Part shown: positions 40,645-64,000 of the stretch, piece by piece | Layout of the letters: the number at the start of each line of letters is the position of its first letter | How positions within the stretch are numbered: position 1 is the first letter of the stretch | Origin: Auanema rhodensis | Lineage: Eukaryota; Animalia; Nematoda | DNA: 64,000 bases | Direction: 5' to 3' | NCBI GenBank assembly: GCA_964057225.1 | Contig: OZ059898.1 | Location: 7,316,001 to 7,380,000, forward strand | The notes under the pieces: model-generated | Databases searched by the model: none | Told to the model about the DNA's origin: nothing | The model's input: the letters and a program-made list of their open reading frames with translations, nothing else | Position numbers and translations under genes: made by a program

Positions 40645-43600
40645 TCAGTCATCATCGGACTAAAAACGAAAAAAATAAATTGGGAGAATACTTCGAAACT
40701 CACGTCGTTGTGGTCAATACCCTGGAGCAACTGGTTTGTGTTCAGAGTATCAAAACCACCTTGGGGAGTCATACTTAAAGGAATTTCGTTAAGAGTTACA
40801 CCCTCAAGTAAAGCCTGATAAAAACTATTATGAAAAAAAGCAACTTATAAATAACAAACCATTTCAGCATCAGCACGGTTTCTGTACGTTACAAACAACT
40901 CGGGCTTACCACTGGAAGAAACTTCGTTTCGAATTGATACTATTTCGCCAAGAAGACCCAGTTGTTCTTGAACGTAATTTTGTTGATCATTCTGAATTAA
41001 ATTTATGATTATTCAGTATTGAACTAGAAATTGAAATTACATCAAAACCTTTCACCAGTATAGTTACAGCATCTTGATTGGTATCAGTCCACTCTTCTCC
41101 TATAAATAACGAGTATATAAAAAATCAAATATGAACCTAACCATTTACAGAATTTTCTTCGAGCAAATTTTTAGTTGTAACTACAGTAACAGTTCCTTCT
41201 TCTTGGAGTGGAGGACTTTCACTATTACGAGAATCATCATTACTAGTTGAACGAGCTTTGATTTGAGTCTCTAGGTCAGTAATAGAATCCAAAATCTTCT
41301 TTATTTCTTCCATATGTTGAGCATGCTGAAAATTCGCATTAAAAAGGCTCTTAGAAATAAATCAAATTACATCATCTTTGGCGGAAGTAATACTTTCACT
41401 TAGCTTTTGAGCAATAGCTTTCAATTTTTTCTTCTTTTCTGCTTCTTTGTTCTCTCTTAACTGAAAAGACATCGATGCAACACTATGCTTTGTTAGACGT
41501 ACCGCTGATATGACAACTTTCTGTTTCTCCACAAGTTTTTCAAGCAAAGCCATAGATTTCTTTTGAACATCCATAACAGCAAATTTTCGGTTCTAAAACA
41601 TATTTTTTAATCCAATTCATGATGTCAAAAAATACTTTTTGCTCTTTCAAGTTTTTCCGCAATTCTGAGAGTATTTGACGACTTTCCAGAACAGCAGGAT
41701 TGACAAACTTTGCTTCCCGTACTGATGCAACTTTTGGAGGTGGCTGATTAACAACCGGAGGAGGCACAGACTTATCCGATCTATGAACCTGACCATTTGG
41801 AGCAGAAGATCCTCCAGACTAAACAAAATCGAAAGGGTAAAAAAAATTGTATTTTTAATAAATTACCACGGTTTCAGTGTTTTCTGGATTATACCAAAAC
41901 AGTTTGATAAAACGGTTATTCAATACAGGTGTTGGAGACTTTAGTGCACTAACGGCTTCTTGCCTATTACTATAAGTTATGAGAGCAGATTCAGGATCGC
42001 CATTGAAATGAACCTAGAAAAATATAATGAAAAAATTTTGAAATTGTTTTCACGTGCCTGTAAGTTTACAATGGTTCCAAAGTTAGCAAAGTGTTCATTC
42101 AATTTAGATATATTGTTCTGTTCTGGAGGAATTTTCTTAACCTGAAATATTTCAATTTAAAAAAACATTGTAACTGGTTGGGTATATACCTGTATAGTTT
42201 TATTATCACCACGATTTGGCAACCGAGTTCCAGCATTAACAGCACCGCCTCGACCACGTCCTCTACTACAATTACGAATTGGACCAGCTGCTCCAGGATC
42301 CATAGGCAAACTTGCGCTATCATAAGACATCTGAAAACGTTTCATTAACAAATTACTTTTAAAAAATTGCCTATACCATATTTCCTTGTGGAGGAACAGG
42401 GTAAGGGGCAGATCTCCAGTTTAGATGCATGGGAATAGGAGGGGGAGGGAATGAATAAGTGGGTCCAGCCATACCAGGAGCCTCAGGATTATATCCTGAA
42501 GAAAAAAATAGAAATTAAAAATTATTTGAAAATCAAGGAAAACCTTCAACAGGAGCAGCGACATAGCTCCCATCCACACCAGGAGGAGGAGGATTCAGGG
42601 TATTATAGCCAGGAGGTGGTACACTAGACAACTAATTAGAAAAGAGTAAAAAAACCATGTTACTATACCTAAAGTTTGGTGTCGGAGCTTTTTGATTATT
42701 TTTCACAAATTTATCAAGAGCAGAATCATCTACTACAACGGGATCAGGACCATGATCATACTGACAGCTATCCCCCCTTGAGCACACTCCGGCTTCTGTA
42801 AAACAAATAAGTAAAATTGAAAAACTCAAACAATTACCATGATAATCTCGACAACGTCTTTTTGGTTTTTCGTCTTTTCTATCGCGTCTTTCAACTGATC
42901 GAGATCTGCTTCTTCTATTATGTCTACTACGTCCATATTCAGGTGATCTGCGTCTCCCACGACGATCTCTGGGTGATCTTGATTTACGTCGTTGAAACTC
43001 TCGCTGTTCCCGTTCTCTAGCATCCTTCTAAAATAAAATTTGAATCATTAAAAAAAGAATTTGGAACCTTGATCTCAGCAGGAGGAGGACTAATCCGTTT
43101 TCTTTCTATCCTTTCTGAACGATTACTAGTGGAGGTATCTCGCTTTTCTTCTTTCTTCGACGTAGTTGTAACTCGTCGTTTGTCTTCACGATCAGATACA
43201 CTTGAGGTAGTTGGCTAAAAATTTCTAGTATATCTTCGTGATCATATGACCAAACGATGCCTTAATATCATCTTTTTCCTTATGAGATTTAACCGAGTCA
43301 TCTCTTTTCTCTTTAACAGGAGATGTTTCGCCTGCTTTGAACTCGGGAGATTCTTCTTTAGACATATAAGATTTGCTTTTTAGCACAGTAAACAACTTAT
43401 CACTAAACTTGGTGTTGTCTAAAAAAAGATATTTTAAAATTATGTTAAAACTTGTTCGTACGGCCTGGAAGAAAATCCTCTAATTGTTTGGTGATATGGA
43501 ATTTCAATTCATCATCAGTTTTACCCTGTTTTTTAACTAATGCTACGACATATTTGGCTAGAGCTGATGGTTCAGCGTCACATCTAAAATATGGAAATAA

Positions 43601-43685
43601 CAAGCATTGTACTAAAGATAACTCACATTGGTCCTAGCTCTTTAACTAACCAATTTGTCAATGACTCTTCACAATCAATTTGCAT
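40645..43685 (-). CDS. rbm-26: RBM26/27 family RNA-binding protein (PWI, CCCH zinc finger, RRMs)
   Basis: PWI: LGPICDAEPSALAKYVVAL. ZnF: RCRDYH.AGVCSRGDSCQYDHGPDP. RRM: HFANFGTIVNLQVHFNGDPESALITY...VLNNRFIKLFW. Two GC-AG introns. Confidence 0.92.
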
Positions 43686-44083
43686 CTGAAAAAACAAGAT
43701 ATTGATGATTGTGAAAAATTACAATATAATAAACAATAAAAGAAAAGAGAAAGATATATAAAACGAAAAATGGTAGCATGAATGTAAGAATGAACAACTG
43801 ACACTAAACAACGCGGAACAATGACCACTAAGCTATTTCATTCATCTTTTTCTAAACGATGATCGCGAATTTTACTTTTACTTTCTTGACTACTAATAGA
43901 AAATACAACAATTTGCTCTAGGTTCAATGTTTTTTGGTGCGCAGAGCCTATCTTTTTCGAGACTCTGTAAAGTAAACATGTCTCTCGAAGAAATTTTGCA
44001 GCGCTAACACTCTGAAATCCAGTTCATCTAAGCTCGACACTTCATATTTCCATTTTGTTTCTGGAAAATATCTTTCAGATTCA

Positions 44084-46361
44084 ATGACGGCAGACAATGT
44101 TGAGTCGCTAACGCCGTTAACAAGAAGTATTAAACGTTGTAGTAGCTCTTTATCAACCATATCCTATACATCTTTACTTCAAGATCTCCGTAATCGTATT
44201 TTACAGGTAAACTTTATAAGAATTTATCGATCATACAATTTCTGCTTTAACAGGACAGGCTAACCAAAAAATTCAATGCAGAAGACATAGCAAGAATTAA
44301 ACATGAGGATTGGTGGCTTCTTACGTTCCTCACAAGCTGCCACTATGATCCTGACGTAAGTTATAGTGTAGTGATGGAATGCCTTCGTTGGAGAAATAAC
44401 TTTGAGATAGAACGTATGTCTTTCTTTAAACATTGGATAAAACTTATAATGCAGACTTGAGCATTCTGGAACTCAAACCATACTTAGAGCAGCAATTGAT
44501 CTTTATACACGGTAAAGACCATATGAATAACGTTCTGTGTTAGTCAATCCTAACTTTTCAAATTATATATATATTTTTAAGTATGGGTCAACAGTATGTT
44601 GCTCCACGAAGCTAACAAAACAGTGGAGCAACTATTAATATTTTGGCTAGATAACTACTTTATGGCTACAAGAGCTAACAGCCACATGAGTATTTTAATA
44701 GATATGTATGGTTCTCGAACAAAGCACATGGTTAGTACACAAGCGATCAATCGATAACTAAAGATATGCAATTAAAGGATATTAATGTTATGAAATTCAT
44801 ATTAAGAGCAGCAAAGTATTATTATCCAGGATTGATTCAAGATATATTAGTTTATGAATCGCCTTCGATTCTCAGCGCTCCGTGGAAAGTAATTGAAAGA
44901 GCATGACTATAAGACAACATAGTTATTTAAGGTAGTTCGGTCATGGATTGAACCAGGACATCCCACCCTGCATCAAGTTAGCAAAGACACAATAATCGAC
45001 TTCGTAGACCCGGTGTTCCTTAAGAGCTATCAAGGTGGTACGGTAAGATATTCGCTTATATATCCTCAATGTTTCAATCAAATCTGCTAACTCTACATAA
45101 CAGCCGCGCTGACCACTAACCACGGGATTCCCTTACATTCTACAATCCGAACTAGCAACATATGCCTTTTCGCTGTTACAATTGAACTTTCAGTCAACAC
45201 TACTAAGCCTCCTTTGCTATACTCCACTCATTTTTTAGGATAATTTTGTCTTCACTATGAGCGAGATCGCTAATTGCTTGCCTACACCTTTATCGTCAAT
45301 TTCACAGAATCAGAATTCAAACGGATTTCATGAAGTTGAATTTCAAAAACCGAATCTCGATGACTATCCAATGCGCAGAAGGGTGAGTAATATTAACTTC
45401 AAATATTATACTAAAACAAAAAAATAAAGTCGGTGAAATTTGACGAAGACACAGGCAGAGCTATTCCACTTACTCTACCTAGACGACCAAGTAAAGGACC
45501 TGGAAGAAGAAATGGTTATCCAACAGCGTTGAAGCCTATAATCGAGAAAAGAATGAATGCTAGTGAGAACGATTGGCTGTCAACATCGCTTGTATCAATC
45601 AGGTAGGGAAAAAACAAGAAGCTAATACTAAAAATTTTATTTTAGTCCCCGAGATGAACTTGCTTTATCCAAAATAGAATCCGAAACTGACTATGTGGAT
45701 ATTATTATAGTGCGCAACAATTCAGATAAAGGAATGCAATTCAAAATCAAAACCACAGCCCCAGAAAAATTCCGAGTAAGACCTAGCACAGGATTTATCA
45801 AGGCAAAGAACTCAGAAATTGTGAGAGTACATCTACAAAATGGTAAAATAATAGGAAAAAACAAAGTTATATGTAATTTTAGAGTATAAGTACTCCGCAT
45901 CCAAAGAAAAAATTTTACTCCTAACTATGAACACGGATGATCCAAATACAGAAAATTTTTCTGATATCTGGAAGAAATCACCGCCTGAAGAAAGAGTAGA
46001 GCATAAACTTAAATGCAAAATTCATGACGATTCAGAAGATTTAATAAATGGAAAACCAGAGAGACGTTCAAGTCTATTCACAGCTCAGGTTAATTTTAAG
46101 TTGATTAATAATAGAAATAGAATTTCTTTGCAGCAAGAAACCATAGATAAACTAAATGATACCATCAAAAGTATGGCAAGCATTCAACAAATTATGATCA
46201 TAGTCATGTGTTTATTGTTCGCTATTCAAGTCATAATTATCATGTATGAAAATTCGAACTATTCTGACCTTAGAGCGCGAATTGAGACAGTTTCAAAAAC
46301 AATAATTCTGAAGCAGAGTGATGGTATACAAAAGCCTATGCATGCTGATGAAGATCTTTAA
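44084..46361 (+). CDS. hpo-28: MOSPD2-like protein: CRAL-TRIO + MSP domain + C-terminal TM
   Basis: CLRWR, HGKD, YYPG and PWKVVRSW (CRAL-TRIO); FKIKTTAPEKFRVRPSTG (MSP); C-terminal hydrophobic helix. Symbol from recalled C. elegans B0336.11. Confidence 0.85.
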
Positions 46362-46887
46362 GCGTTTTAAATGGTTGTTGAAAAAATGAAATGTGATTTT
46401 GAATGTGAACTAAGATTAATAAATACGAAATGTTATTAAACGTCTTACGGTTTTAAGAAAAAATAAGGAAAATGAAAACATGAACATAAACAATTTTAAG
46501 TAAGGCTATTTAAATTTCAAGTGCTTAACAAAAACAATAAAGAAACAAGCTGTTATAATTTAGCATACTGCAAGAATTAAAGATTATTAAAAACGTGTTC
46601 AGACAGCGCGATTGTATTGCAGCGCATGTGTGATAATTGGTCTCGGTTGGAAATTTTCTTTTGGCTGCTGGAAAACTGAGTATTCAACTACGATGACAAG
46701 GCAATTTTCACTATAGAAAAATATTTCTATTTCTATAATTACCTAAAGTATTTTTGAAAGTTTTGCTTTTTTAGCTTTTGTATATTTACGAATTTTGCGA
46801 TAATTCTTTCGACCGAATGTCTTAGTATAGATTCCTTGGGATTGTTATGCGAGGAACGTATTTTTCAATGTTTTGGTTTTAGGTAAG

Positions 46888-47516
<629 letters not shown>

Positions 47517-48091
47517 ATTGTTACTGTTATTATCCGGGTTGCCCGAATAAATGTTTAATTAAATATCTTGTTTTTTTTAATTGCTATAAGAAGATGAATT
47601 ATAAATTAACATTGAGAAATATGAAAGTTATATATCTTTTAATGGAAGTTGCGCTCCACTAGAGAAATATTGGACCAATGCTAAATGGTACGGTGTATGT
47701 TGCAATGATAAGAATTTAAATGTGAGAAGAACAAATTCAATTAGAATGCCTTTTTTATGCATTCTGTGTCGATGAGCATACCAGTATGTGTTTAATTTAA
47801 AAAAGCGAACTTATCGAATAATTCCCGCTATATGTCTTACGGTTGTCATTCGATTTTGCGTATCTCGTGAACTAGTGTAAATGACAAGATTTCAATTCGA
47901 TGCGTACCTTTACATTTGAAATATTTACAAAATGTGTATTAGTTTTATTTTGTCAGTACTAAAAATCTATTATACTGTATATGCAATTAATTTTTTCTTT
48001 GGAAGTTTTTATATCTACTACCATTAGAAGTTTTAAATGGTTTTGTTTTTTAAATTATATTAGATATAACTATATTTCAGTACCATACGGA

Positions 48092-48875
48092 ATGGTTTCT
48101 CTTGCTTGCGAAGGTGCTTTTCCTCCTGGATCTTCTGTAAAGTTTAATACAGTCCTGGGAGGGAACGTGCAGGGGGATGTCGTCTGTTTCGATCCATCGC
48201 TGAAGGTTAAAAATTTATAAGTATTGCTACTTTAATTATTATTAAATTGTTTTAGGTACTTATTATAAAGGATAATACCAATGAGGGTAAACCTACTCTT
48301 CGTATGTTTAACATGTCTATGATCAATAATGTGAAATTGCTGTAGATGTTTGTAGATATGTTATTTATTTTTTTAGATCGTAAGCGTGAGCAATACGAAA
48401 AGTGAATCTGTTGAAAATTATCTATCGAATTGTTCGTTAACTACTCAACAGGTTTGAAACATTCTTGAAAGTAAAGTTGAAATATTGTTAGGCATCTGAT
48501 CGCTGCTTTTTGTCGGAAAGTCGGCGAAGAGTAGAAATAATGGATGAAAGTGTATGCATAGAAGGCCAGAAAGCTTTCCTTCAATTACGCCGTATTCTGG
48601 ACGAAGTCTGTTGGAAGGTATTAATAGTCATTATCTATATTTCATCGGATATTTCATTCTTAGGGTCCCGATATTCATGTTCTGGGAAGAGTTATTGTTA
48701 AAGCACCATACAGTGCCAACAGCGCTCTAGTTAATGAGGTTTTGAGAATATTTTGATTGTATTTGATTTTTGATTTTAGGATACCGATCAAGCTAGAGCC
48801 GCTCTGGCTCAAGTAAAAAAAATTCTCTCCAAGCCATTTGTTTGTGAAAACAAGTTGACTCCTTGTCATAAGTAG
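48092..48875 (+). CDS. LSM12-like protein (Lsm + anticodon-binding domain)
   Basis: GSSVKFNTVLGGNVQGDVVCFDPSLKVLIIK...EGQKAFLQLRRIL.EVCWKGPDIHVLGRVIVKAPY...ALAQVKKIL. Confidence 0.8.
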
Positions 48876-49260
48876 TGTTAGTTCTATACACTATAGGTGA
48901 CCCACCATCTCCCTTTTCCTCTCTTTTGCCTGGTGCTAGAATCACCGTTTAATTCATGTCACGCGTTATAATACAAGTATTGTCTAATTTTTTGTAGTCC
49001 ATTTTCAATTAGTTTAGTATCTGAGTTGTATGGGTTGTGACAAACGCTCTTGTTTTCAAGTCGACCTCAAGTTCCATTTCTTTAATTTTAAATACCTGAG
49101 CTCCCGTTCCTACGTTCATTTTCCCAAATCGTTTTTAGATGATGACTAATTAATGTAAATGTAATAAATATTCATTTTTCTGGAACCGTTATATAATATC
49201 GTCGTTTGTTCGATTCTATTTGACGAACCTGTTTTAACTGTTTTATTAGTCTTCAGTATT

Positions 49261-50162
49261 ATGTCTGACAGTGAGGATTACCAACTGCGAAATGATAGTC
49301 TTGCTGCTTTGCAAGAATTCTTGTAAGTGTTATCATAAATAGTATTTAAATCTGATTATCTGCTTGTAGGAATGAACAAAAAGAAAGGGAAGCTGCAAAC
49401 GAAGCTTCTCCTGAAATTTCCGAAGATTGGCAGGTTGACCAGTTTCTCTGCACTTTTTTCATTTCTTTTTAGTTATCACAATTCTGGTATGACGCTGAAA
49501 CAGCCCGAAAGCTCACTTCAGAAGCAATTGCTGCTTGTAATGGAAAAAAAAATGCCAAGATAGCATGTATTAGTTCACCAACACTTATGAAATATTTTAA
49601 GGAGGAAAAAGTAAAGCCACATAACTGTTCTTTTTTACTCTTACATTTAGGCAGTTATAAACGGAGAAGTTGAACTAAAAGTGTTTGAGTACGATAAGCG
49701 GTTTGAAATCAAGTACCCTGAAGAATTTGTTTTTTATGATTATAAAGAGCCTTTGATTGTTCCAACAGAATTGAAAGGTGCCGTTTCAAATGATGACTTA
49801 TACATAATTCATTTTTAGAATATTTTGATGTATTAGTTGTTGATCCTCCTTTCCTTTCTGTAGAATGTTTGGTGAAAACAGCTCAAACCGTTCGGTTACT
49901 CTCTCATTCTTCAACTAAAATAATTTTATGCACAGGTGCAATAATGGAAGAACAGGTAGGTTCTTAGATTTTCATTACGGTTTAGTTTCAAAATCGTCAG
50001 CTAATATGAATCATAGTGCACATAAGTACAATTATTAAATTTTATTGATTTCAGGCTTTAAAATTATTGAATGCCAAGAGAACTAACTTCGATCCGAGAC
50101 ATGAAAATAATTTAGCCAATGAGTTTGCCTGTTATACAAATTATAGCCCTATTAAATTGTGA
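49261..50162 (+). CDS. EEF1AKMT1: eEF1A lysine N-methyltransferase 1 (N6AMT2/Efm5)
   Basis: MSDSED...[58 protein letters not shown]. Confidence 0.93.
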
Positions 50163-50241
50163 TAGAATTCTAGATCTTTGTTATTCGTTTTTGTTATTGT
50201 TTTATGTTAGTCAATTTCATCATGTCTAAATTGTTCGTTTG

Positions 50242-50330
50242 TTTGAACCGTATAATTCGGTTTAAAATTACTTTAACGCTTTTTTGTGTTTTATTACCCT
50301 TTTTAATTTTAAATTTTAATAATTTTTCAG
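50242..50330 (+). promoter_or_regulatory. Ur element (stem-loop + UAYYUU) and trans-splice acceptor for rle-1
   Basis: TTTGAACCG-tataatt-CGGTTTAAA hairpin, then TACTTT at 50269-50274, then TTTTCAG ending at 50330. Confidence 0.65.
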
Positions 50331-50420
50331 TGCTTTCTAAATCCATGTAAGCATCTGACGAGATTCAATTTCACTGTTTGAAAGTTTGGATTTTGTATAC
50401 CGTGTATACGTCTTTTTGTA

Positions 50421-53400
50421 ATGGCTCCTGCAGGGCAGGGTCAGGCTTGGTCTCACATTTTGTGTTGTCTCAAGTGCGATAAGGCATGGCAAAAGTTTTT
50501 TCAATGTCTTTATAATAAAATATTACAGAGATTTTCTTCTGAATATTTGCCCGTGAACCTTGCTTGTGGTCATGTAGTTTGCAATTCTTGTGTCACAGGT
50601 TTAACAACTGTGTGTCCATCTGATGAGGTATTTGGATTATTATTCAATCTCTATAGCATTACTATGATCATTTCCAGTTAACGAGTGCATATTCTTGGCA
50701 AGAGTATCCTGTAAACGTGCCTTTATTATCCATTTGTGTAAATGAGTACACAAATGAACTTGCTAATTGGAAACGGGCAGATAATGATTTACAGGCTAGT
50801 GATATTTTGAATAATCTGTAAATCATTTGTTATTTAGAAAGTATTGTCTAATATCGAAGAAGATCTTCTTAAGCTTGCCTCATATCTGAAAAGAGCCGAA
50901 TCGGAAAGAGGTGGTAGCGTGTTCAGCGAGGTTATATTAGCATATTTATGTATATGAACATATATTCTATAGGTTCTTTCTCGAACAATGCAAAGAAAAT
51001 TAGTTGCACTAATTTGCTATCAATTAGTTGAAGAAGATGGTAGATCTCGAGCTTTAAAAACATGCAGAGCTTTAGTTGATCGTATTATTGCTGAAGTAAT
51101 GACCTTATATATATACATTAAGAGATTTTTTGTTTTTATAGGTTATAACTATTAACTCTTCATCCAACCCAAGTACTCAGTTATGGTCTGAAGTAAGAGC
51201 TCGTGGATGTCAGTTCTTGGGTCCTGGTACTAAGAAATGTTTTTGATATGTATACATAATCTTATACTACAGCTATGCAAGAAGATGTCCTCAAGTTAAT
51301 TCTTTTAGCCCTCGGTAATGGTGCTCAAATAGCTAGAAAGACATTAGTTATTTATGTTGTTCAAAAGCTTACTGAAGATTATCCTCAGGTTGTGTAACTA
51401 TTCATTTACAGTATCTAATAATTAAGTTCAAGGTTTCTAAGACTTGTGTTGGGCATGTTGTACAACTTCTTTATCGTGCTTCTTGTTTCCATGTTATCAA
51501 AAGAGATGGTGAATCGTCATTAATGCAGCTGAAAGAAGAGTTCAGAACATACGAAACTTTGAGAAAAGAACACGATGCTCAAATCGTTCATGTATTTGTT
51601 TTATCATTAATATTTTGTTAATTTTTAAAGATCAGATGGCTATGGAAGCTGGATTGAAAATCACTCCTGATCAATGGTCTTCTTTATTATATGGTGATTG
51701 GCAACATCGCCCTCATATGCAGTCAATTATTGGTATTATTTATTGAATTTTATCCATTTCCCTATTATGATCATTTTAGATAAGTTACAATCTCCACAAA
51801 GTTATCAGTTGAGTCTAGATGGATTAGAACACTTCGCTTCAAATGGTGATCCAATTCTACCAAAAATGTTAAAACTACTTACTATTTTTGGTGATATTCA
51901 TCCCTTTCATCATGGTAAGCCTCGTGACATTTTTCGGGATAGCTTTATTATTTATAGAAGCCGTTACTTGGGAAAAATTTGCTGAAATTATCTCTGCCCT
52001 TGCGCAGGTTGTAGAATTGCATGTTTCATACATTAAAAACAAGAATGAGATTAAACAAAGAGAGAAGGCCTGGAGAGCTCAGAAGAAGGATGAGAAATCA
52101 ACTGCTTATGTGGCTACAAGATATAAGACTCGGATGTGCCGGTAATCAATTGTTCATTTATTTAAGCTACGTTTTTTTTAGCGATGCGGTTCGGGGACAA
52201 TTATGTCCAAGAGGAAGCCGATGCACTTTTGCTCATTTTTTTGATGAAATACATGTTCCTATGAGTTCAGGAGACAATGTTCATATGCCACCAAGTCACA
52301 TTGTTACTACCATCCCTGCACACATGAATCAACAATGTGAACAAGTATTCTAGATGTTTTGGCTTTGTATTTGAATTTTTAATTTTTAGCCAAATTATCA
52401 GATGGCTCAAACACAACAGGGTGTTCCTAATGTTGGTGTGCAGCGATTGCAAATTATTCACGCTCCACCACCTAATCCCTACGGACCAATCACACAGCAT
52501 GGTTAGTTATCGTTTATCAGAATTTGAAAAACAGCAGGTATAATTTTTAAAGTTTTACCTCAAGCTGCTCCTGAAGTTGTGCCAATGGTTCCTATGGTGC
52601 CCGTTGTTCAATCACCTGGTGGACCTCATGCTGTTCCCATTCAACCACCAGCTATGCTTTTAGTAAGATTACATATTAATGAGTATAATAACTATAGCTT
52701 CAGATGAGCCACCCCCCTCCTCCTAATGTTATGGTAACTCCTAAGATCTGGCAAAGCTCCCAGCAAGCAGTCTTTTTACACCCAACTTCTCCCCAACAAC
52801 CTACATTTTGGTTGTCCACACAGTATGTTATGCTTTACGTATTGTTATTTTGCTTTCAAACTTTAGGACACCTGGTTTCTCCATAGATAATGGTCGAGAA
52901 GCGGTTAAAATTGATTGTCGTTCTGAGCCAGATCCTGATCAATTAGTCATGAAAAGAAAGGAAATTTTAAGGTTTGTAATGCCCTAATATACTAATGTTT
53001 AATAAACTGTTCAGCCGCTTGGCTCCTTTCACTTTGACTGATGATGAAGAAGGAGATGATAGTGTTGGTCACGTATCATATACTGTGGCGTCGTCTGTTT
53101 TGGATGAAAGGTATTCATTCGGCTCGCTCGGTATTCACTTTTCTTTTCAGAATGGAGCTTCATCCTCATCCTCATTCTCATTCTCATTCTCATTCTCATC
53201 CTTTGGTTGTAATTGGACGTCCTCCCTTGGAACTACCCCCTATACCAGCTGTAATGTCACCTAATCCGAATGAGGAAAATATGTAAGTTTTTTGATAATT
53301 TATACTTTCTAACGATATTGATTTGTTTTTTTAATTTTAGTATGATGAGAACTTCTGATATGGTTGCCGTTCCTGCAAGACCTAGAGCTCCTAGTGTGCC

Positions 53401-54114
53401 TTTTATTCAGGCTAGTGAAATTTGAAATATTTTTTCTCATTATTTTTTTTCAGTCTGTTCAGATGCCTTGCGAAACTCTAGTAGCTCCTGATGGAACCAG
53501 CCTAGCCACAGTACAGTCCGATTGCACTGCAATGCAGATTTGTGAGACAATTTGTCAACCTCTTCCAACAGCAGGTATTCAACCAACGCAAGGTTAGATT
53601 AAATCCAGACATCGTTTGGATCCGTAGACAGAAAAACAGCAAAAAAATTATATTTCTGTTTCTACTTATTTGAGAAAATTAGTATTATTTCAGTTTCAAC
53701 AGTTGCTTTTATACCAGCATTAGATCCATGTGGATTAAGTGATCGCATGGCTGTTATGCCTCCTCCACCACCCCCTATTTTGGATCCTCAAGGAGTGGTT
53801 TCTAGCAGTTTGGATAAAATTGTTGATGTTAAAGAAAGGCTTAATGAAGCTGAAGGTTCGCTTGTTCGATTGATTAAGTTAAGTTCACTTTTTTCTTCAG
53901 GTGCTACTATGTCTTCTGCTGTCAGCCAGCAGCTTCGGGTTGAATTGCAAATTGCTGAACGTGAAATGGATTTATTAGATCCTAGGACTCAAGCAAGCTG
54001 TTTGTTGCGTGAGCTTCAACAGGTATGGGATATCGTTTTTCTTATATTTCCAATTTTTCTGTGAAGGTTGATCGAGAACTGGAACGAATTGAAGCTGCTC
54101 GCCCCGCAGAATAG
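50421..54114 (+). CDS. rle-1: Roquin (RING, ROQ, CCCH zinc finger, Pro-rich region, coiled coil)
   Basis: [44 protein letters not shown]...[18 protein letters not shown]...[10 protein letters not shown], ZnF YKTRMC...[11 protein letters not shown]. About 21 exons, three GC-AG introns. Confidence 0.95.
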
Positions 54115-54214
54115 CTCAATTTTCATATCAGAACGTCTGTTGTTGTTCTTCTTAATGTGACTGTTGTTCCTTTTTAACACATTCAAAGGGTATAATTGGT
54201 TGTTTCCGATAATC

Positions 54215-54233
54215 AAGCTTTGTATCAAAGCTT
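54215..54233 (+). promoter_or_regulatory. CDE-like tri-loop hairpin in the presumptive rle-1 3' UTR
   Basis: AAGCTTTG-TAT-CAAAGCTT: perfect 8-bp stem with a UAU loop. Confidence 0.5.
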
Positions 54234-54660
54234 AATATTACACTATGTAAATATTATTAGGAATTGAGTGGAATTTTTCATCCACATGGCAAATTTCTTA
54301 CTCGTTTTTCGGGGCCAAATTCTCTTGTTATTACATACATGTAGGGAGTCACTTGTAAACGTAAATTGAAGTGAGAAGTCCTTGGTTTTAGATTCTTTTG
54401 TCCAACTAATGTATGCCATACTTTGAGTAATTTTACACTTTACGTTATTAAAGTCGAATATAGGCTTTATCATCATAGCTTTTATTTAGATTAACCGGTT
54501 GGGCAGAGGTAACTTGATTGTAGTTCATGTTTGTTTTTTGCTTGAATATATGTTTAATCTTTGTTGTTGTTATTTACCAATAATCGTGATACAGTATCTA
54601 CTGCTTCTATTTCGTGTTTTCATTTGATCAATCGAAGTTTCAAATTAATATTTCAAGATT

Positions 54661-56147
54661 ATGAATAATCCAACATGTGATCTCTTCCCTTGTGGATATA
54701 CTCTTCAAAGATGGATAGGTTATTCGATTTAATCTGCACTGACTGAAACAGAGATTTCAGGCCACTGCTTTAACGGATTGGGGGATGTTTTTCTGGCTAA
54801 ATGTAATGATTCTTCGCGAACAACTATTAAAAGAATTATTGTTGATTGCTTAATTGAGCCTGCCCATGTCATGGTACGTTGAAACAAAAGTTTGGAACAC
54901 TTCTCATGTTTTGAAGAACATTTCGAAGTATGAAAAGTTTATCCGCTCAAAAGCAATGTAGTGTTAATCATTAGTTGATTTCTCTTTCAATGACAGGATG
55001 AAGTCAAAATGCTAAAATCTCTTCGACATCAACATATATTGGAGTTTCATGCCTCATTTGTATATAAAAATGATTTACTTATTGCCACACCAACTTGCAG
55101 CTATGGTTTGCCAACGTTTCATGAACTGATCACCTATATACATTTTAGGATCCGCGCTAGACATTATACTCAGTGTTTACCAACATGGTCTTCCCGAGAA
55201 AGCAATTGCTGTTTTATTAGCTCAATTGCTTAAGGCTGTAAATTATCTACATCAGCAAGATATTGTACATAGGTTTTGAGTTATTTTCCCTTTTAAATGT
55301 ATTATAATTTTTTTTAGATCGATTAGAGCTTCACACCTATTAATCGAAAATAATGGTAATCTTAGACTAACTGGATTCAGGTGTTCGGCTTATTTGCCAA
55401 AGGTATATTACATCTTCAGCATCCATATGATTTTATATTTCAGAATACTCGAAGAAAACTAACAGAATTTGATAAGAGTTTAGAAGGATCATTGTTGTGG
55501 CTTGCACCTGAAGTTCTTGCTCAAGTAGAATCCTTTTTCTTTTTTAGCTAATCATTTTTTAAAGGATTTAAATGGGTACGGAGTGAAATCTGATGTATAC
55601 AGCATAGGAATTACTTTATGTGAATTGGCAAATGGATTTCCACCCTTTTCTGACATGGAACCTCTTCAAATGTTGTACGAGAAGGTATTTCAGATAAATG
55701 CTTGATATCATCTGATTAAGTTTTAACGTTTGTTAATTATAGGGTAGAGGTACGGTACCCAAGTTATTAGATGCTAAAACATTACCTGACAGCGGTTAGT
55801 ATTCATAAATTCACTGAAGCGGAATTATTTCTTGATATTAAGATCATTCTGCTCATGGTAGTCGCGAATTTTCTGAAGCATTTCATGACATCACCGAACA
55901 AAGTCTGAAAGCTAATCAGTATACACGACCCGATGCCTCTTTTCTTCTTCAACACCCTTTTGTTCGAAAATCAAAGAAGACTGTTTTAGAGTATTTACCA
56001 TTGGTGAAGACATTAGAAGAAGTTGAAAAATGTAATCAAAGATCAACATATAATGAATGCATTATCTCTTTTTTTTCAGTTTCTGAGAAAACACCCGTTG
56101 ATGAGGCTGCGATAATTAGTCCTGAATGGTCCTACGAAACTTCATGA
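54661..56147 (+). CDS. strd-1: STE20-related adaptor pseudokinase STRAD
   Basis: Kinase fold with HRSIRASH replacing HRD and LTGF replacing DFG; [33 protein letters not shown]; C-terminal EWSY resembling the WEF MO25-binding motif. Confidence 0.9.
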
Positions 56148-56436
56148 ATTGCTAGTATACCTGCCAGAAGTTCAAAGTTTGATGTTTACTAAATCTTTGT
56201 TAACAATTATCAGACAAAGTTATTGAAGAACTTATTTCATCTCATTTAGCGTATAATGAGGAAAACTCTTGGAAAGATTTTGTGGATAAATTGTTAACGA
56301 AAACGAAAATAAATGCCATCACGTTAATTGATTTATAACAAGAAAGAAAAGGTTATAATTTTGTGGGAAAGTATGATCAACTGGCTAGAACTGAATATTC
56401 ATATTTATGGGAAAATATTAAATTTATTTCAAAATT

Positions 56437-58700
56437 TCAACCATCATCAGCATAGATTACAGTAGATTCCGCTTGAGCTTCACCAAATTCATTTGTAGCC
56501 GTACACTTATATGTTTCTGTGATCGTCTCAGCATCACCTTTTACCAGTAACACCTCCTGTCGCTTCTGAGATGTCAAACATAAATATTTATTATGAAATA
56601 TAACTAATTAATACCCCATAACGACGAAGACTTTTGAAATCTACTTCTTCTCCGTCTTCACCTATTCTGGTCCATCGTATGGATGGTTTAGGGAATCCAC
56701 CGGCACGGCATATAAGCTCAACCAAGTTGCCTGAAACAGTTGTTTTTCTTCTTATAAATAGTTTACAATACCAGCAAGTTCGATACGACTAACAGTGCTG
56801 AACTTTATGTAAGGAGCTTCGTTAACAACACTCTCGTTTGGACAAGACTTTCCTAAAAATAATTCAGTTCAATGGATATAATCAGTTTGAATTGAGTTAT
56901 AATATAAAATTTCATTTGAATAAAAATTAAAATAAGTAATCTAAAAGACGTAGTTTGTTTTAGATCGGTTTAATCTCCATGTTCTTTAACAACGCAGAAC
57001 AAAACAAAACACATGATATTAAAATAGAAAAGAAACTTTCATAATCTGATGTATTGCTGTTTTCACTTTGTAAAGAGTAAAATATTCCAAACTTCTATTC
57101 AAAAATATTCTTGCTACTATGCGAAAGTGGAACTATTCGTGATTTATTTCTCTTCGTAATAAATATATTTTCGAAATTGAAAGGTTTTATATGTTTCTGC
57201 ATGAGCAACAAATCATCTCTTAGATAGAAAGAAATAACTTTTTAGAAATTCAAGATAATCTGTTGCTTCTCAATTGAATAAATCGAGAAAATAATGAGGA
57301 TGATTATATTCATACCTGCTCCAAATGTTACAATGGATGTACTGGAAATGTGTTGACCACAGGGAGTTCGAGCTTCGCAACGATACTGTCCTGCGGTGTT
57401 CACGTTCACACAAGGAATTTTCAGAGCTGAAAGAACTGTTTTATTTCTTAGCAGCTCAATGTATTGAACGAACATGATTGAATTACACTAGTTCCCATCA
57501 CACGACGATTCACTAATAATTCTCCAGATGATGCACGCTGCTCAGATACAAGATTATCACCGTGATACCACAAAATATCAGCCTATACTTTAGTAATTTT
57601 CTTTGTTTTAAATCGAATTTGTACTTGTGGAGTTGCCAGTACACTGCATGTTAAGGTTAACTCTTCTCCCTCTTCTGCAGCGAAATTTTGCGGCTTATTC
57701 TCAAATGATAGAGCTGGAGGTTCCAATAATCCGCTGCACATGAGATAAGGAGCTGGCTGTGGCAAAAGACTTCGTAGAAAATGCATGTAAGGCCGAGGCA
57801 GGATTGCCCGAGGACTCTGAAAGTGAACAGCTCTTTAAATAAGTATGTACTAAATTGTGGGAAGAAGCTGTTCAAAAACCAGAGAAAAAATGAGAAATTA
57901 TGAGCGTTTGTACCCTCGATAATGAACATAAGGCACATATGATAATTCATTGTGCTCACGTAAAACAACGTCATTCGGAAAAAGGATCGCTTCTAATATC
58001 CGTCATTTCTTTCCCTTTCCGTAATTTTAAAATGATGATTGAACGCAATCAGAAAAGAGCAATATGGATTTGTATAATATGCTCGTTAGAATACATTTCA
58101 GAATTTATATGTTAACCTTAAAATAGAATGTATTTTTTTCTTGAAGAAAGTTAAGAAGACAAAGAAATGAAGTCAAAGAAACAAAGTTTATGTTTGGGAC
58201 ATCACCGTGGTGTTGTATGAAAGTCATTTTTCTAATTTTTTGAGTGAAAACATGAATGAAGTTGGTCGGTTTTCAAAATTTATCGTAATCTTTCTTTCAC
58301 AGTATATTCAGTTCAATTATATTCATTTCGCACAAGACAATCGCGAAATATCTTCACATTAGCTATATGAAGTGGAAACCTATTCTTTAAAGTCAACGGA
58401 ATCGACTAGACTATATGTACGAGTACGATTTCAATAATACCGCCAATAAATTATTTTTGCTTACTGAACAACTTTATGAAATTTGTAAACACACTCACAC
58501 ACTCATACAAACACACATATGCCCACATACATGTAGATATATGTACACACATGTAGCCATTTATAGAGGAAATATAGTTTCTTTATGATGAAAATCATAT
58601 TGTTCCCATAAAACAATTAAAAACATACTCGATTCCCAGCTGCTGCCAAGTTGAGGATGCAGAAAAACGTAAAACCAATTATGGTACTGATGTTAGTCAT
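56437..58700 (-). CDS. zig-5: Secreted two-Ig-domain ZIG protein
   Basis: Signal peptide exon MTNISTIIGF...AAAGNR, then HFLRSLLPQPAPYLMC. Ig1 LTLTCSV...W...GQYRCEA; Ig2 ELICRAGGFPKPSIRW...YKCTATNEFG. The zig-5 assignment is from recall. Confidence 0.82.
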
Positions 58701-61700
58701 TTCTAAAAATTATTAATTGTTTACACTATTATATTATATATAAGAATATATTAAATCTTTTAACAAACAATCAACGAATTAAAAAATAAATATAAATAAA
58801 TTTCCAGGAGTAAAAGGAGATCATATTAGAGTTTCGGAAAACTTAACTTTTTTGAACCCGTTATTAAATTTTCAAGCACCAAGCCTAAAATCGCTGATTT
58901 TTCAAATTCTAATAGTTTAAATAAACAAAAACTTAGAAAAAAATTGAATCAAAGGTTCAAATATGTGTATATGTATGCTAATGGAATATAATAATAATTT
59001 ACGAAACAATATCACGATACATTTAACGTTTTGTATGCAAACTTGAAAAAAGTTCGGAGAAAAAAATAATAAACGGAAATGCGGAAATTACATAACATGC
59101 ATAATGAATTATTTTTTTTAATATTCATTCGATTTCAGAGTTATATCCGATTTAGCAGAAACAAAGTATTATATCAAATGAAACTATGAAAAAAATAAGA
59201 ACAAAGAGTATTTGAACTAAAAATAAACGACTAACTCTTGAGCATATGAACAATCACTGTAGATGAAAATAGTTGAATTGCATAAGATCAGAAGATCTTA
59301 AGTGATAAAAAAAGATGAAAAGTGAAAGAGAAAAAAGATTTTTCATATTACATAGGCCATGCGTTGGCGACTGCTGACGACAGAATAGTTTTACTAATAC
59401 CATATTGTGATAATCCTTGTGGAACGTGAGAAAAAGATCAAGATTAGCTATAAATTGTCAAGAAATTATGGAACTCTGATGTCATCTTTAAATAGTGTTT
59501 CTTCACTGAGCTTATGCTATATAAAAGTTAAACATATTCAGCAATTTTCGTGGAAATCGAAAACCTAAGTTATAGTTCAAAATGCAGCTTACTCATTTCT
59601 ACTGCAACTAGATGAGATCAAAGGATTAAAACTAGGAAAAGAAAATTCTAAGTAAAAGTGATGATTCATCAAGAAACAAAGAATAAGGAAGTTCGAGGAA
59701 GTAAATTGACTAATTTTTATTCTGTTAATCAACGTTGATGCTTTTCTTGAGTTTCTCACTGTAAGTCTTTTGCTCTCATAATTTATCTTACTCTCTTTTT
59801 TCTTTTAGAAATTTATATGAAAAAATGCTGGTGGGTGACAAAATGAAAAGAAAGAGTTATAAGCTTTATATGGAATTATAGCCACGCCTCTTTTTTTTTC
59901 TGTCTATTTTCACAAGACGTATGTTTCTTGCAGTATGTTGTTTAAAAATCAAATGAAAAAAAAGGTTACTATACAAAAAAAAGAAAATTAAAATTGTTTT
60001 TTTAATCAAAACAGCTTTGAAATGTTAGTATCAATAACATAAAACAAGAGAGCCAAACTTTATTAAATTGAGTTTCGATTCAAGACAGTAATAAATATTC
60101 TATTTTATAAAAAGAAATATTAAAAACAAATGCGTAACATTCAAATTTTCAAAGAGGGATCAGTAATATGTAAAATTATGTATACATCTCTGTATTTAAT
60201 TATGATCAAGTAATCTAGATAAGTAGAGATAATGAGGCATATGCTCGAGAAGATAATGTTCTCATTGAAATATCGAAATAGATTGAATCGTAAGTTAGCT
60301 AGATAAATGTTGAATGGAGAAGCTGATTTCACTAATAGACTCGAACAAGAACCTATTCTTCAAATATATATTAGACGTGAAGATAGCAAAGTACCATAAT
60401 GTATCTGAGTTGTTAGGAAACAGCTATTTCAAATACTACTACGATTATTCAACTCAATCATATTTTACGTACGCACTTCAGGATGAAGTGAACAGAAAAT
60501 AAGAAATAATATGTTTAGACAGCTAAATTTCTGAACTAGCATGAGATGACACACGAGATCTACATATATTTATATATATACTTGAATATGCTGAAGTTAT
60601 TAAAGAATGCCAAATAAAAATGTTGTTGAAAAGTTCAGTCTTAGATCAATTTAGTTGAATTTTCCGATAGGACTGAAGTATAATTTGAAGCAATATAAAT
60701 ATCAGAGCATAGATACCGATGTTTGAGATCGAATATTCAGGTGTGAGAGAAAACAGAAACAAATTCAATATTTTTTGAAAATCACAGAAGTTGATATTAT
60801 GTACTATGTATGTATATACGTGCATAATATATTTGAAATTAATTCAATTTGCTGAAAAAAATGAGATTTGGATAAAAACAGATAAATGCTCTTTAATTCT
60901 CTTCACTAACTTATTTAATACTCGTAATTTAAAACTTCAATGAAAAAGTGAAAAAATTGATTAAATGGTGTGAAAGAAGATGATGGATGAACCTTCTTGA
61001 ACAGCTGAGTATTTGAGATAACTGCGAGATGGAAGAAAAATATTTATTACTTTCAGGATTTATATGAGTTTTGAATAAGAATGATCAATCTAATATGTAG
61101 ACGTCACAATTATTCAGATGATTGTGGTAGTAGCAATAGTTTGTTGTTTTTTTTTTTGAAAAAAAAAGAAAGCTTTAGAAAAAATTGAAAAATACGTTTG
61201 ATAGTTTGCACAGGGCAAAGCTAGTAAATGAGAAAATGAAAACCGTCTGACTCAAGGTAGGGAAACGGATAAAGCATCCGCTTTCGTTGTAGTAATAACC
61301 GAAAAGCAGAACATGCTCGGGATATCTCACTAGGATTTCCTTACATTTTCCTCAGGCAATTTTAGCGCACATAGTCTTCTGAAAAAATTAAATATTTTCA
61401 AATGTTTAGTGATGTAAACGGAAATAATACCAGAGTTTTCTGTTCTTATGAAAAGATTACAATATTTTTTATACCAGGTTTAGATGAAAAGTTTCGAAAA
61501 TCTGTTGGTGCTGGAATTTTAATATTATATATAAAATTCAACCTGAATTTCGCTCCAAAACTTTTAATTTCAATTTGTGATTTGCAGAACAAACAAAGGA
61601 TTGGTTTGCAATCATTAAAGATTTTCTCATCATTCACAACTTTTTTAGTTTATAAAGATTAAAGTTTAGCATTAGCTTTGTAGCCAACACTACAATAAAC

Positions 61701-62577
61701 TGCTTCGAAAGGAAACATAAACAGCCAATATGAATTTTTTTTTTCAATATTTCAATCAGGTATGGTTGATTTTTTTTTTACAAAAAGGCTATATTTCAAT
61801 CTACCTTCGTAAACTTGGCTATTGAAACGAGAAAAGTGCACAGGATATGACACAAGTGTCTACGATTAGAAAGGTCAGCTGCATGTGGCTAAATCTTTCC
61901 AGATATTCACATCAGCTGTTCTTTGATTTACATTGACATATTAAAGACGTAGTAAAGGTTGAAAGAGCCATATATTAGTATAACATACAATTACTATTCG
62001 ATATAGTAATGTTACAGCCACTATTTGAACAAATCTCTAAAAAAGCATCGTTCATTTAAATTTAAATCAGATCACATGAAAAATATAAAACAAAGGAATG
62101 CATTAGTTTTTCATTTAACTCCATTCATATATACATATTGGAAGTTTGAACATCCAATTTTACTCAAATATTATGCGTAAATATAGCTTTTTCAGAAATG
62201 TATATATTTTTCAAATTAAGATATTCTCCTTCTGGTGTTTGGTTTCTGTTACTTATCAATTGAAACAATATATATGTAAATGGTGTTATTCTCCTAATTC
62301 TCAACATTTAGTTCAGTGATACCCCCAAGAGCTAACATAATCAACAAATTTTTATACAAATTAGTCTTGGCGCGCAAACCTCTTTTAAGCGTTTTCGCAA
62401 TGGAGCGAGTATTTATCATTTACAGTCACTGTGAATTACATTGGGGTCAATATTCCAAATTCAAGGAGTATTTTTCTGAGCTTTGAAGCGGAAGTTCGAG
62501 TTCTTACGTCATTCTTATAAAGAACATACGCTTACGTTTAAGGATTTTTGTCCTTTACCTTTAAAGTAGAGACTGCT

Positions 62578-64000
62578 ATGGTTCGAGTATGCAGGGTTGT
62601 ACCTAAAGAGTGAGACAATTTATTCATATTTTCTATCAGCCTTTACTTTTCATATAGTTTTTTAATCTCCATTTATTTTGTTCAATATGAATAATATCAA
62701 TTATTAACATTTATAGATATATAAAGTGTTTATTATTTATCTGGTATATATGAATATTTTTCAGATGGTCCAAATACAATCCTGTCGGTAATGTGATACC
62801 TCGCACACGTTTTATAGTTTTTAAAACACCATTAAATGATAGTCTACTTACTAGAGTTCCAAGTGCTCAACGTTTCAATGTATCAGGTTTGCTTTGGAAA
62901 GTAAGTCATAATGACAATTATAATCTATATAATACTTTTATTTGCTTTCAGATTGCGGAAAAAAATGGACATCTTGGTTTAGTAATTGATCTCACTGATA
63001 CAGATAGATATTATGACAAAACTGATATTGAGGGGATGTGCATTAAATATACCAAGATAAATTGTCCTGGTCGTGGGTGAGTCCAAATCCAAATGAATCC
63101 AAAATTCAATGGTTATTGTGTTTGCTGTTTAGATTTATCGAAAATGAAGACCACGTTGATGATTTTGTCAAAGCAGTTTCTGAATTTTTACAAGAATCGG
63201 ATGATAAAGGTTTTAAAAGTTTTTATTTGCGTAATTTCGTATTAATTTTCAGAATGCTTAATTGGTGTTCATTGCACCCATGGGGTAAATCGCAGCGGCT
63301 ATTTAATTTGTAGATTTCTTATTGATACTTTAGGATGGTCTTCCCATGAAGCTTTATCAGGTAACCTATAGTCAATATTGCAATAATATATCAATAAAAT
63401 ATTTCCAGCATTTGAGGAAGCTCGGGGACATCCAATTTCTAATGGTTCTTATGTACAGGCACTTCATAAAGCTTCTATGCGGAGAATGTACCTTATTAGT
63501 TTTGCAACTTTCTTGTAAAATAGTACTTTAGAAATGATTCTGAGAGTGATGATAGTTCAAGAAAAAAAAAGAAAAAACAGAAACGAAAACGTGATAGAAA
63601 AGAACACGATGATTCTAGACACTTGGGCAGTATGATGCAGCAGTTTATCGGCCAAATTGAAGAACAGGCATTTTTTTTTTCATTTTTATTTGAAACATAT
63701 TACGTTTAAAGGCACAAGTATTGGAGTCAAATTCCGGGTTTGATTCTTCTGCTGCAATAGCAAGTGGTTATATTGAGTCTTCTCATCATCACTGGGCATT
63801 CCAACAACCTAAGGTTTTGAATTATTATTATTTTTTCTATTTGTTTTTTAGCGACATAGAGCTGAGGGATCGGAACAAGCAGTTGATGAGGGAGCCGAAG
63901 AAGAAATCGTGGATTATGCTGATGAAGTATGTAAAAATGTATTATTAAAGTTATGAATTTATTTTTTTAGGCTGAGGAAGGTGAATATGCTGATGATGCC
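62578..64000 (+). CDS. pir-2: DUSP11/PIR1-type RNA 5'-phosphatase (C. elegans F54C8.4-like), truncated by window end
   Basis: MVRVCRVVPK.WSKYNPVGNVIPRTRFIVFKTP, LGLVIDLTDTDRYYD, active site VHCTHGVNRSGY, basic NLS-like RKKKKKQKRKR. No guanylyltransferase domain follows within the window. Confidence 0.85.

What the first reader, a model, noticed from the sequence alone, without database searches (positions are those of the whole stretch)
42014..63711. Unusually frequent GC-AG introns with weak intronic consensus
Seen: six GC donors among roughly 95 hand-spliced introns in the right compartment: rbm-26 (-) 42014-42057 and 43215-43260; rle-1 50484-50528, 50795-50837 and 53411-53453; pir-2 63668-63711. 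Frame or homology requires them (e.g. VNLQ|VHFNGDPE and the RING spacing). All follow exonic AAG or CAG, yet the intronic bases are degenerate (gcacgt, gcatcg, gcatgg, gctagt x2, gcattt). Known: GC-AG introns are usually about 1% or fewer and carry a strong GCAAGT. Inference: 5' splice-site choice here leans on exonic AG (U5 loop 1 / U1 pairing) and fixed ~44-nt intron length, suggesting a divergent spliceosome.
Basis: partly seen in the sequence, partly recalled or inferred. Interest (0 to 1): 0.75.

Follow-up and report, generated by a model that had tools for sequence, protein, structure and literature searches.

The report
Frequent GC-start introns in Auanema
Six very short introns in three genes of this roundworm really do begin with GC instead of the usual GT, and such introns seem to make up a few per cent of all its introns, several times the usual animal rate; they look like ordinary introns read by an ordinary U1 RNA, not the product of a rebuilt splicing machine.

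Summary
All six GC donors sit at the stated coordinates. A gene finder I wrote, which penalised GC, GA and GG donors equally, recovered all six exactly. All are phase 0, 43-46 nt long and preceded by AAG or CAG. The three in rle-1 are confirmed to the residue: the exons tile an Auanema sp. JU1783 orthologue without gap or insert. The two in rbm-26 and the one in pir-2 rest on frame and model only. No RNA evidence could be reached.

Window rate is 6 of about 95 introns (6%). Genome-wide pattern counts with controls suggest roughly 2-4% (plausible range 1-5%). C. elegans has 0.37%; cyst nematodes have 3.5%.

The intronic bases are indeed weak, but GT donors here are just as weak. GC donors compensate in the exon: AG in 6/6 against 38% of GT donors.

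All 17 U1 copies read have the canonical 5' end, and no U1 has a changed base opposite +2.

This is a new lineage for a known oddity. The scan flagged the same pattern before in other windows of this genome (s1-422414, s1-391298, s1-391423).

The parts
42014..42057 (-). GC-AG intron, 44 nt, phase 0, rbm-26 intron 12 (VNLQ|VHFNGDPE), CAG|GCACGT...TTTTCTAG
   Evidence: Retention shifts the frame. One in-frame alternative GT donor lies 12 nt upstream (56-nt intron, would delete VNLQ). No orthologue or RNA check was possible.
43215..43260 (-). GC-AG intron, 46 nt, phase 0, rbm-26 intron 5, AAG|GCATCG...ATTTTTAG
   Evidence: Retention meets a stop after 11 codons. The alternatives need poor acceptors or a 79-nt intron. 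The 5' end resembles a U12-type donor (6/7) but there is no U12 branch site.
50484..50528 (+). GC-AG intron, 45 nt, phase 0, rle-1 (Roquin) intron 1 inside the RING finger, AAG|GCATGG...ATTACAG
   Evidence: The flanking exons abut at residues 21|22 of orthologue P0004. The C. elegans-like P0005 also lacks a 15-residue insert. The intron is in frame and stop-free.
50795..50837 (+). GC-AG intron, 43 nt, phase 0, rle-1 intron 3, CAG|GCTAGT...TTATTTAG
   Evidence: The exons abut at residues 93|94 of P0004 (DLQ|KVLS against ELK|KTLS). A same-length GT alternative shifted by 4 nt would need the poor acceptor GAAAG and would lose the conserved K.
53411..53453 (+). GC-AG intron, 43 nt, phase 0, rle-1 intron 19, CAG|GCTAGT...TTTTTTTTCAG
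   Evidence: The exons abut at residues 735|736 of P0004. The genome-wide pattern searches also found it at C6:7369409-7369453.
63668..63711 (+). GC-AG intron, 44 nt, phase 0, PIR1/DUSP11-like phosphatase gene ('pir-2') intron 7, CAG|GCATTT...GTTTAAAG
   Evidence: Retention meets a stop after 13 codons. The only frame-keeping GT alternative is an 89-nt intron with a poor acceptor. It lies in a poorly conserved C-terminal tail, so there is no homology check.
50421..54114 (+). rle-1 (Roquin) gene model, 23 exons and 22 introns, 3 of them GC-AG
   Evidence: All 23 exons tile P0004 in order, with 617 of 871 residues identical.
40645..44160 (-). rbm-26 gene model, 20 exons and 19 introns, 2 of them GC-AG (one further GA call is probably a model error)

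Best explanation
These are ordinary major-spliceosome (U2-type) GC-AG introns in a genome, probably Auanema rhodense, where such introns are several times more common than in most animals: about 2-4% of introns. Introns here are very short (mode about 45 nt) and 5' splice sites are generally weak. Recognition therefore probably rests on intron definition (short length, AT-rich body, T-rich tract plus AG) together with a modest total of U1 base pairs. A T-to-C change at +2 costs one U1 pair. It is tolerated mainly where the exon ends in AG, often CAG, which supplies two or three pairs on the other side of the junction. The U1 5' end is canonical, so no special machinery is needed. Shown here: the positions, the exact junctions for rle-1, the exonic compensation, the canonical U1 and the elevated frequency. 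Inferred: the intron-definition mechanism, and that the excess arose by relaxed selection or drift rather than by regulation.
For: An unbiased gene finder recovers all six with equal treatment of GC, GA and GG donors. Orthologue tiling confirms the three rle-1 junctions. AG| occurs in 6/6 GC donors against 50/131 GT donors (p=0.004), and matches to the U1 complement are 6.0 against 4.5 of 8 (p=0.004), all from the exon side. Genome-wide counts for AG|GYWNGT...TTTTCAG: T 232 (control 21), C 28 (control 10), G 10. Counts for MAG|GYW...TTTTTTCAG: C 44 non-satellite (control 8), against about 400 non-repeat T. On C1 the figures are 8 against 55. Converted with locally measured class frequencies, these give 0.6-5%, centred on 2-4%. 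The pooled local rate is 7/185 = 3.8%. U1 is canonical in 17 of 17 copies and no +2-compensating variant exists. GT donors are equally degenerate. C. elegans GC-AG donors are also reported as less conserved than those of other species (PMC1557818).
Against: There is no RNA evidence for any of the six. Three junctions rest on frame and model only. The genome-wide rate is indirect: one estimate reaches down to 0.6% and the only unselected 50-kb sample gave 1 GC intron in about 60-85. A rate near 1%, with this window as an outlier, is therefore not excluded. The anticorrelation between exon and intron parts of GT donors (rho=-0.34) may partly be a selection effect of my own scoring. U5, U6, U2 and spliceosomal proteins were not examined. 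Earlier scan notes mention an altered U2 core and a diverged U1 copy, which I did not test.
Confidence: 0.72

Rival explanations
1. Divergent spliceosome: 5' splice-site choice has been rewired through changed snRNAs or proteins, so that +2 is no longer read strictly and exonic AG plus fixed length define the site.
For: GC-AG frequency is elevated. GT donors are generally weak and full GTAAGT is rare. Earlier scan notes, untested here, report non-AG acceptors, an altered U2 core and a diverged U1 copy in this genome.
Against: The U1 5' end is canonical in all 17 copies read, and no variant has a non-A opposite +2. GC donors show the classical U1 compensation (exonic AG; +4 A enrichment in the G5T6 class), which argues that U1 pairing still matters. 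A frequency of a few per cent is matched by cyst nematodes, where the GC donors fit the same CAGG[T|C]AAGT consensus as the GT donors (PMC4901422).
Confidence: 0.08
2. Regulatory weak donors: the GC donors are kept because they make splicing of these RNA-regulator genes (Roquin, RBM26) inefficient or alternative, for example by intron retention or autoregulation.
For: Five of the six lie in two RNA-binding regulator genes: 3 of 22 introns in rle-1, p=0.03 at a 3% rate. The first rle-1 intron is in frame and stop-free, so retention would give a 15-residue RING insert. GC donors are enriched in alternatively spliced genes in human, nematode and Arabidopsis (abstract of PMC2490688). The same gene has annotated alternative donors elsewhere.
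Against: Five of the six would give frameshifts or stops if retained. Orthologue isoforms show no variation at these junctions. The genome-wide excess suggests a general property rather than gene-specific control. No transcript data were available.
Confidence: 0.15
3. Artefact or sampling fluke: some models are wrong (true donors are nearby GT, or the introns are retained), or the +2 bases are assembly errors, and the true genome rate is the usual 1% or less.
For: rbm-26 42057 has an in-frame GT alternative, and one rle-1 intron has a same-length GT alternative. My lowest genome-wide estimate is 0.6%. This window was picked out because it looked unusual.
Against: Three junctions are fixed by the orthologue. 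All six have the modal length and AG| context. Six independent T-to-C errors in one assembly are implausible. GC matches exceed both the reversed-pattern control and the G control genome-wide.
Confidence: 0.05

Closest known systems
GC/AG-rich genomes of cyst nematodes (Globodera rostochiensis 3.46%, G. pallida 3.53%, Rotylenchulus reniformis 2.36%; Eves-van den Akker et al. 2016, PMC4901422)
   Same: A nematode genome with a few per cent GC-AG introns spliced by the normal machinery. Default gene predictors are expected to miss them. Several can occur in one gene.
   Different: The lineage is different: a free-living rhabditine, whereas that paper states the elevation appears restricted to Heteroderidae. 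In Globodera both GT and GC donors fit CAGG[T|C]AAGT. Here the intronic part is weak for both types and compensation is exonic. No 3' bias within genes is visible in this small sample. Conservation between sister species could not be tested.
C. elegans GC-AG introns (0.37% of introns; Sheth et al. 2006, PMC1557818; Farrer et al. 2002 as cited there)
   Same: They are U2-type with nematode-style T-rich acceptors. The GC-AG donor motif is reported as less conserved than in other species and close to the species' own GT motif, as here.
   Different: The frequency here is about 5-10 times higher. Introns are even shorter and more uniform.
[quoted passage not shown]
   Same: A whole-genome relaxation of the donor dinucleotide in a compact genome.
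   Different: Those involve GA (position +2 A) at about 10%, with a proposed U1 isoform variant. Here only GC is enriched (GA/GG calls are at noise level) and no U1 variant was found.

Membership tests
U2-type GC-AG intron | Intron begins with GC and ends with AG | tested here: met
   all six.
U2-type GC-AG intron | Exact removal is needed to give the conserved protein | tested here: met
   Met for the three rle-1 introns by exon-by-exon tiling on orthologue P0004. For rbm-26 (two) and pir-2 (one) only frame and gene model support it.
U2-type GC-AG intron | Spliced junction seen in RNA | not testable with these tools
   No transcript-derived protein or contig of this species could be reached.
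U2-type GC-AG intron | Other donor positions compensate for the +2 mismatch to U1 | tested here: met
   6.0 against 4.5 of 8 matches (p=0.004), from the exon side; AG| in 6/6 against 38%. Genome-wide, +4 A is enriched among GC donors in the G5T6 class. The intronic part of the six themselves is not stronger than in GT donors.
U2-type GC-AG intron | Not U12-type: no ATCCTT donor with a TCCTTAAC branch site | tested here: met
   No branch-site match within 2 mismatches in any of the six. One donor (GCATCGTTT) resembles the U12 donor in 6 of 7 positions but has a nematode-type acceptor. Presence of U11/U12 genes was not tested.
Genome with elevated GC-AG frequency (Heteroderidae type) | GC-AG at 2% or more of all introns genome-wide | tested here: inconclusive
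   Indirect estimates run from 0.6% to 5%, centred on 2-4%. Local rates are 7/185 overall and 1 in about 60-85 in the only unselected sample.
Genome with elevated GC-AG frequency (Heteroderidae type) | GC and GT donors share a strong CAGG[T|C]AAGT consensus | tested here: not met
   AG|GTAAGT...TTTTCAG occurs only 29 times and AG|GCAAGT 8 times in the genome. Most GC donors listed lack G at +5.
Genome with elevated GC-AG frequency (Heteroderidae type) | GC state conserved at orthologous introns of a sister species | not testable with these tools
   DNA of the Auanema sp. JU1783 locus could not be fetched.
Spliceosome with re-programmed U1 | U1 5' end changed at the base opposite +2, or elsewhere in ACUUACCUG | tested here: not met
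17 of 17 copies are canonical. The pattern with a non-A at that base has 0 matches in 181 Mb.

The most novel reading that the evidence does not exclude
Auanema has independently evolved a generally relaxed splice-site code: GC donors at several per cent and, per other scan notes, non-AG acceptors. The cause would be a change in a core spliceosome component other than the U1 5' end (for example U2, U5, U6, PRP8 or U2AF), which makes very short introns definable mostly by length and composition.
Probability: 0.12. Interest if true: 0.65.

Novelty: new member of a known kind. Interest (0 to 1): 0.3.

Why it matters
If about 3% of introns start with GC and genes carry about 10 introns each (Tandonnet et al. 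2019), roughly a quarter of this worm's genes hold at least one intron that default gene predictors will mis-splice. This matters because the published annotation was protein-homology-trained BRAKER2. It would also be a second, independent nematode lineage with elevated GC-AG, outside the plant parasites to which the phenomenon was thought restricted. The species is culturable and has public RNA-seq, so it could be used to ask how much U1 pairing a 45-nt intron really needs.

Tried and rejected
1. A plain ORF-bridging census with all 16 donor dinucleotides was swamped by combinatorial noise.
2. Viterbi self-training of the gene finder with a lenient intron cost ran away to more than 1000 false introns. 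It was fixed with a stricter intron penalty.
3. Sampling about 2 Mb of the genome was not possible.
4. The loose pattern AGGC...TTTTCAG was swamped by a 351-bp satellite.
5. RNA or own-species protein evidence failed by every route. There was no encoding contig for P0004, no own-species protein in the Roquin search and no candidates for two exon queries.
6. PDB and Pfam searches of single rbm-26 and pir-2 exons gave nothing usable for junction checks.
7. A U12-type origin was considered and rejected for lack of branch sites.
All protein comparisons were exon by exon, by reference. My script concatenated predicted exons only internally, to count codons for its own training.
Full report
**What is there.** The window is G000:C6:7316001-7380000 of a 181-Mb assembly in 112 contigs. 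The size matches the 180-Mb germline genome of Auanema rhodense described in bioRxiv 10.64898/2026.08.27.747507. The Roquin protein encoded here is about 71% identical to a protein of Auanema sp. JU1783. The species name is therefore an inference. All six GC dinucleotides are at the stated positions.

**Independent gene models.** I wrote a dynamic-programming gene finder with a codon log-odds score, donor and acceptor weight matrices that ignore the terminal dinucleotides, and an intron-length prior.
- Donors could be GT, GC, GA or GG, with the same 5-bit penalty for C, A and G at +2.
- It ran on 34-64 kb of the window and on an unselected 50-kb stretch of contig C1. It predicted about 95-100 introns in the window part.
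- All six are phase 0, 43-46 nt long (GT median 45) and preceded by AAG or CAG.
- The GA and GG calls lack that context and vary with the settings, so they measure the noise level.

**Homology check, exon by exon.** One ROQ-domain exon was searched against 1.84 billion representative proteins and found Roquin orthologues.
- The best full-length hit, P0004, is CAI4224728.1 of Auanema sp. JU1783.
- Translating each rle-1 exon separately and aligning it to P0004 shows all 23 exons tiling the orthologue in order.
- The exons abut exactly at the three GC junctions: residues 21|22, 93|94 and 735|736.
- The C. elegans-like P0005 also has no 15-residue insert between the first two zinc-ligand pairs of the RING. 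An unspliced reading aligns to mouse/human Roquin-1 (4txa) only by losing the CxxC pair.
- I searched no joined model.
- For rbm-26 and the PIR1-like phosphatase gene I found no orthologue or domain match that crosses the junctions. Those three introns rest on frame, length and context.

Enumerating frame-preserving GT-AG alternatives gave three points:
- One credible rival exists for the rbm-26 intron at 42057: ATT|GTAAAC, 12 nt upstream, giving a 56-nt intron.
- A same-length alternative for 50795 needs a poor acceptor and loses a conserved lysine.
- The intron 50484-50528 is in frame and stop-free, so only homology argues for its removal.

**Is it more than chance, and is it genome-wide?** Six of 95 is incompatible with 0.37% (p=2e-6) or 1% (p=4e-4), but not with 3% (p=0.07). 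Each comes with a reversed-pattern control.

| Pattern | +2 = T | +2 = C | +2 = G |
|---|---|---|---|
| AG\|GYAAGT, 26-40 nt, TTTTCAG | 29 | 8 | not run |
| AG\|GYWNGT, same gap and acceptor | 232 (control 21) | 28 (control 10) | 10 (control 17) |
| MAG\|GYW, 28-42 nt, TTTTTTCAG | 1154 raw, about 400 after removing repeats (control 31) | 97, of which 53 are one satellite, leaving 44 (control 8) | 28, mostly one repeat or shifted G\|GT donors (control 17) |

- In the third pattern the T count is inflated by a repeat-borne intron family and a strand-skewed surplus. From strand symmetry and the fully listed contigs, about 400 are unique. On C1 alone the counts are 55 for T against 8 for C.
- I converted these ratios with the class frequencies measured in my local models. 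MAG plus W at +3 occurs in 25-27% of GT donors and in about 75-100% of GC donors. AG plus W, G5 and T6 occurs in 2-4% of GT donors and about 13% of GC donors.
- The resulting estimates run from 0.6% to 5%, centred on 2-4%. The pooled local rate is 7/185 (3.8%). The unselected C1 stretch alone gave 1 in about 60-85.
- I conclude that GC-AG is probably elevated several-fold, but a value near 1% is not rigorously excluded. A looser pattern was unusable because of a 351-bp satellite.

**Donor anatomy.**
- GT donors of short introns are weak here: -2 A 60%, -1 G 61%, +3 A 62%, +4 A 43%, +5 G 49%, +6 T 43%.
- Among AG|GTWNGT donors the order is GTTTGT > GTATGT > GTTAGT > GTAAGT.
- The six GC donors match the U1 complement at 6.0 of 8 positions outside +2, against 4.5 for GT donors (p=0.004).
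- The gain is wholly exonic: 2.67 against 1.52 of 3, with AG| in 6/6 against 50/131. The intronic part is similar: 2.33 against 1.96 of 4.
- The genome-wide list confirms that most GC donors lack G at +5. Within the G5T6 class, however, GC donors are enriched for +4 A (15/23 against 25/100, p=4e-4).
It describes a genome whose donors are all weak, with GC donors compensated in the classical way, mainly from the exon.

**Machinery.**
- All 17 U1 genes in the eight loci fetched read AAACTTACCTGGCTGGG, the canonical 5' end.
- A genome-wide search for the same context with any non-A at the base that faces +2 found nothing.
- None of the six introns has a U12-type branch site.
- Earlier scan notes mention an intact U6 array, an altered U2 core and a diverged, probably dead U1 copy. 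These are untested leads.

**Comparison with what is known.**
- C. elegans has 0.37% GC-AG, and its GC motif is noted as less conserved than in other species (PMC1557818).
- Animals average 98.3% GT-AG, with GC-AG below 1% in model organisms (PMC7072748).
- The Auanema genome papers held in the library do not mention GC-AG.
- The finding is thus a new lineage for a known oddity. The difference is that compensation is exonic in a weak-donor, 45-nt-intron genome.

**Verdict.** The most likely mechanism is ordinary U1/U2-type splicing under intron definition, with tolerance of +2 C where the exon ends in AG. The same pattern was flagged in other windows of this genome by this scan (s1-422414, s1-391298, s1-391423, s1-411887).

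Noticed in passing
window 53574-53593 (+): rle-1 exon 33 ends with two tandem GT donors 18 nt apart (GCAG|GTATTC and CAAG|GTTAGA). The two annotated isoforms of the Auanema sp. JU1783 orthologue (883 and 889 aa) differ by exactly the six residues GIQPTQ encoded between them, so this alternative 5' splice site is probably conserved.
   Followed up: partly
window 50484-50528 (+): The first rle-1 GC intron is 45 nt, in frame and free of stops. Retention would insert 15 residues, including one Cys, between the first and second zinc-ligand pairs of the Roquin RING finger.
   Followed up: partly
window 43215-43260 (-): The rbm-26 GC intron begins GCATCGTTT, a 6-of-7 match to the U12-type donor ATCCTTT, but it has no U12 branch site and has a nematode-type acceptor. 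It may be a vestige of a former minor-type intron, or chance.
   Followed up: partly
G000 C1 1.1-5.1 Mb, C5 19-20.6 Mb, C6 16.9-20.2 Mb, C7 1.8-3.4 Mb: A satellite with spacing in multiples of 351 bp contains AGGCAAAGACG...TTTTTCAG and so mimics a 47-nt GC-AG intron. It dominates loose intron-pattern counts.
   Followed up: no
G000 C1 15.7-18.8 Mb and C3 4.5-13.5 Mb (22 or more copies): A dispersed repeat carries a conserved 45-nt GT-AG intron-like unit (CAG|GTAAYCTGGTAAG...TTTTTTCAG). It is presumably an intron inside a transposable-element gene.
   Followed up: no
L006-L008 (G000 C3 15.86-16.08 Mb): A tandem array with a 727-bp unit, each unit holding a U1 snRNA gene and a tRNA-Asp(GTC) gene. 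U1 5' ends are canonical.
   Followed up: partly
genome-wide: The full-consensus donor AG|GTAAGT is rare: 29 of 232 AG|GTWNGT...TTTTCAG matches. GTTTGT, GTATGT and GTTAGT are commoner. Exon and intron halves of GT donors are anticorrelated (rho=-0.34), though my scoring may contribute to that.
   Followed up: partly
window 1-36000: The left 36 kb has lower G+C (23-29% against 30-36% on the right) and stretches of strong positive GC and AT skew (12-20 kb, 24-28 kb). It was not analysed.
   Followed up: no
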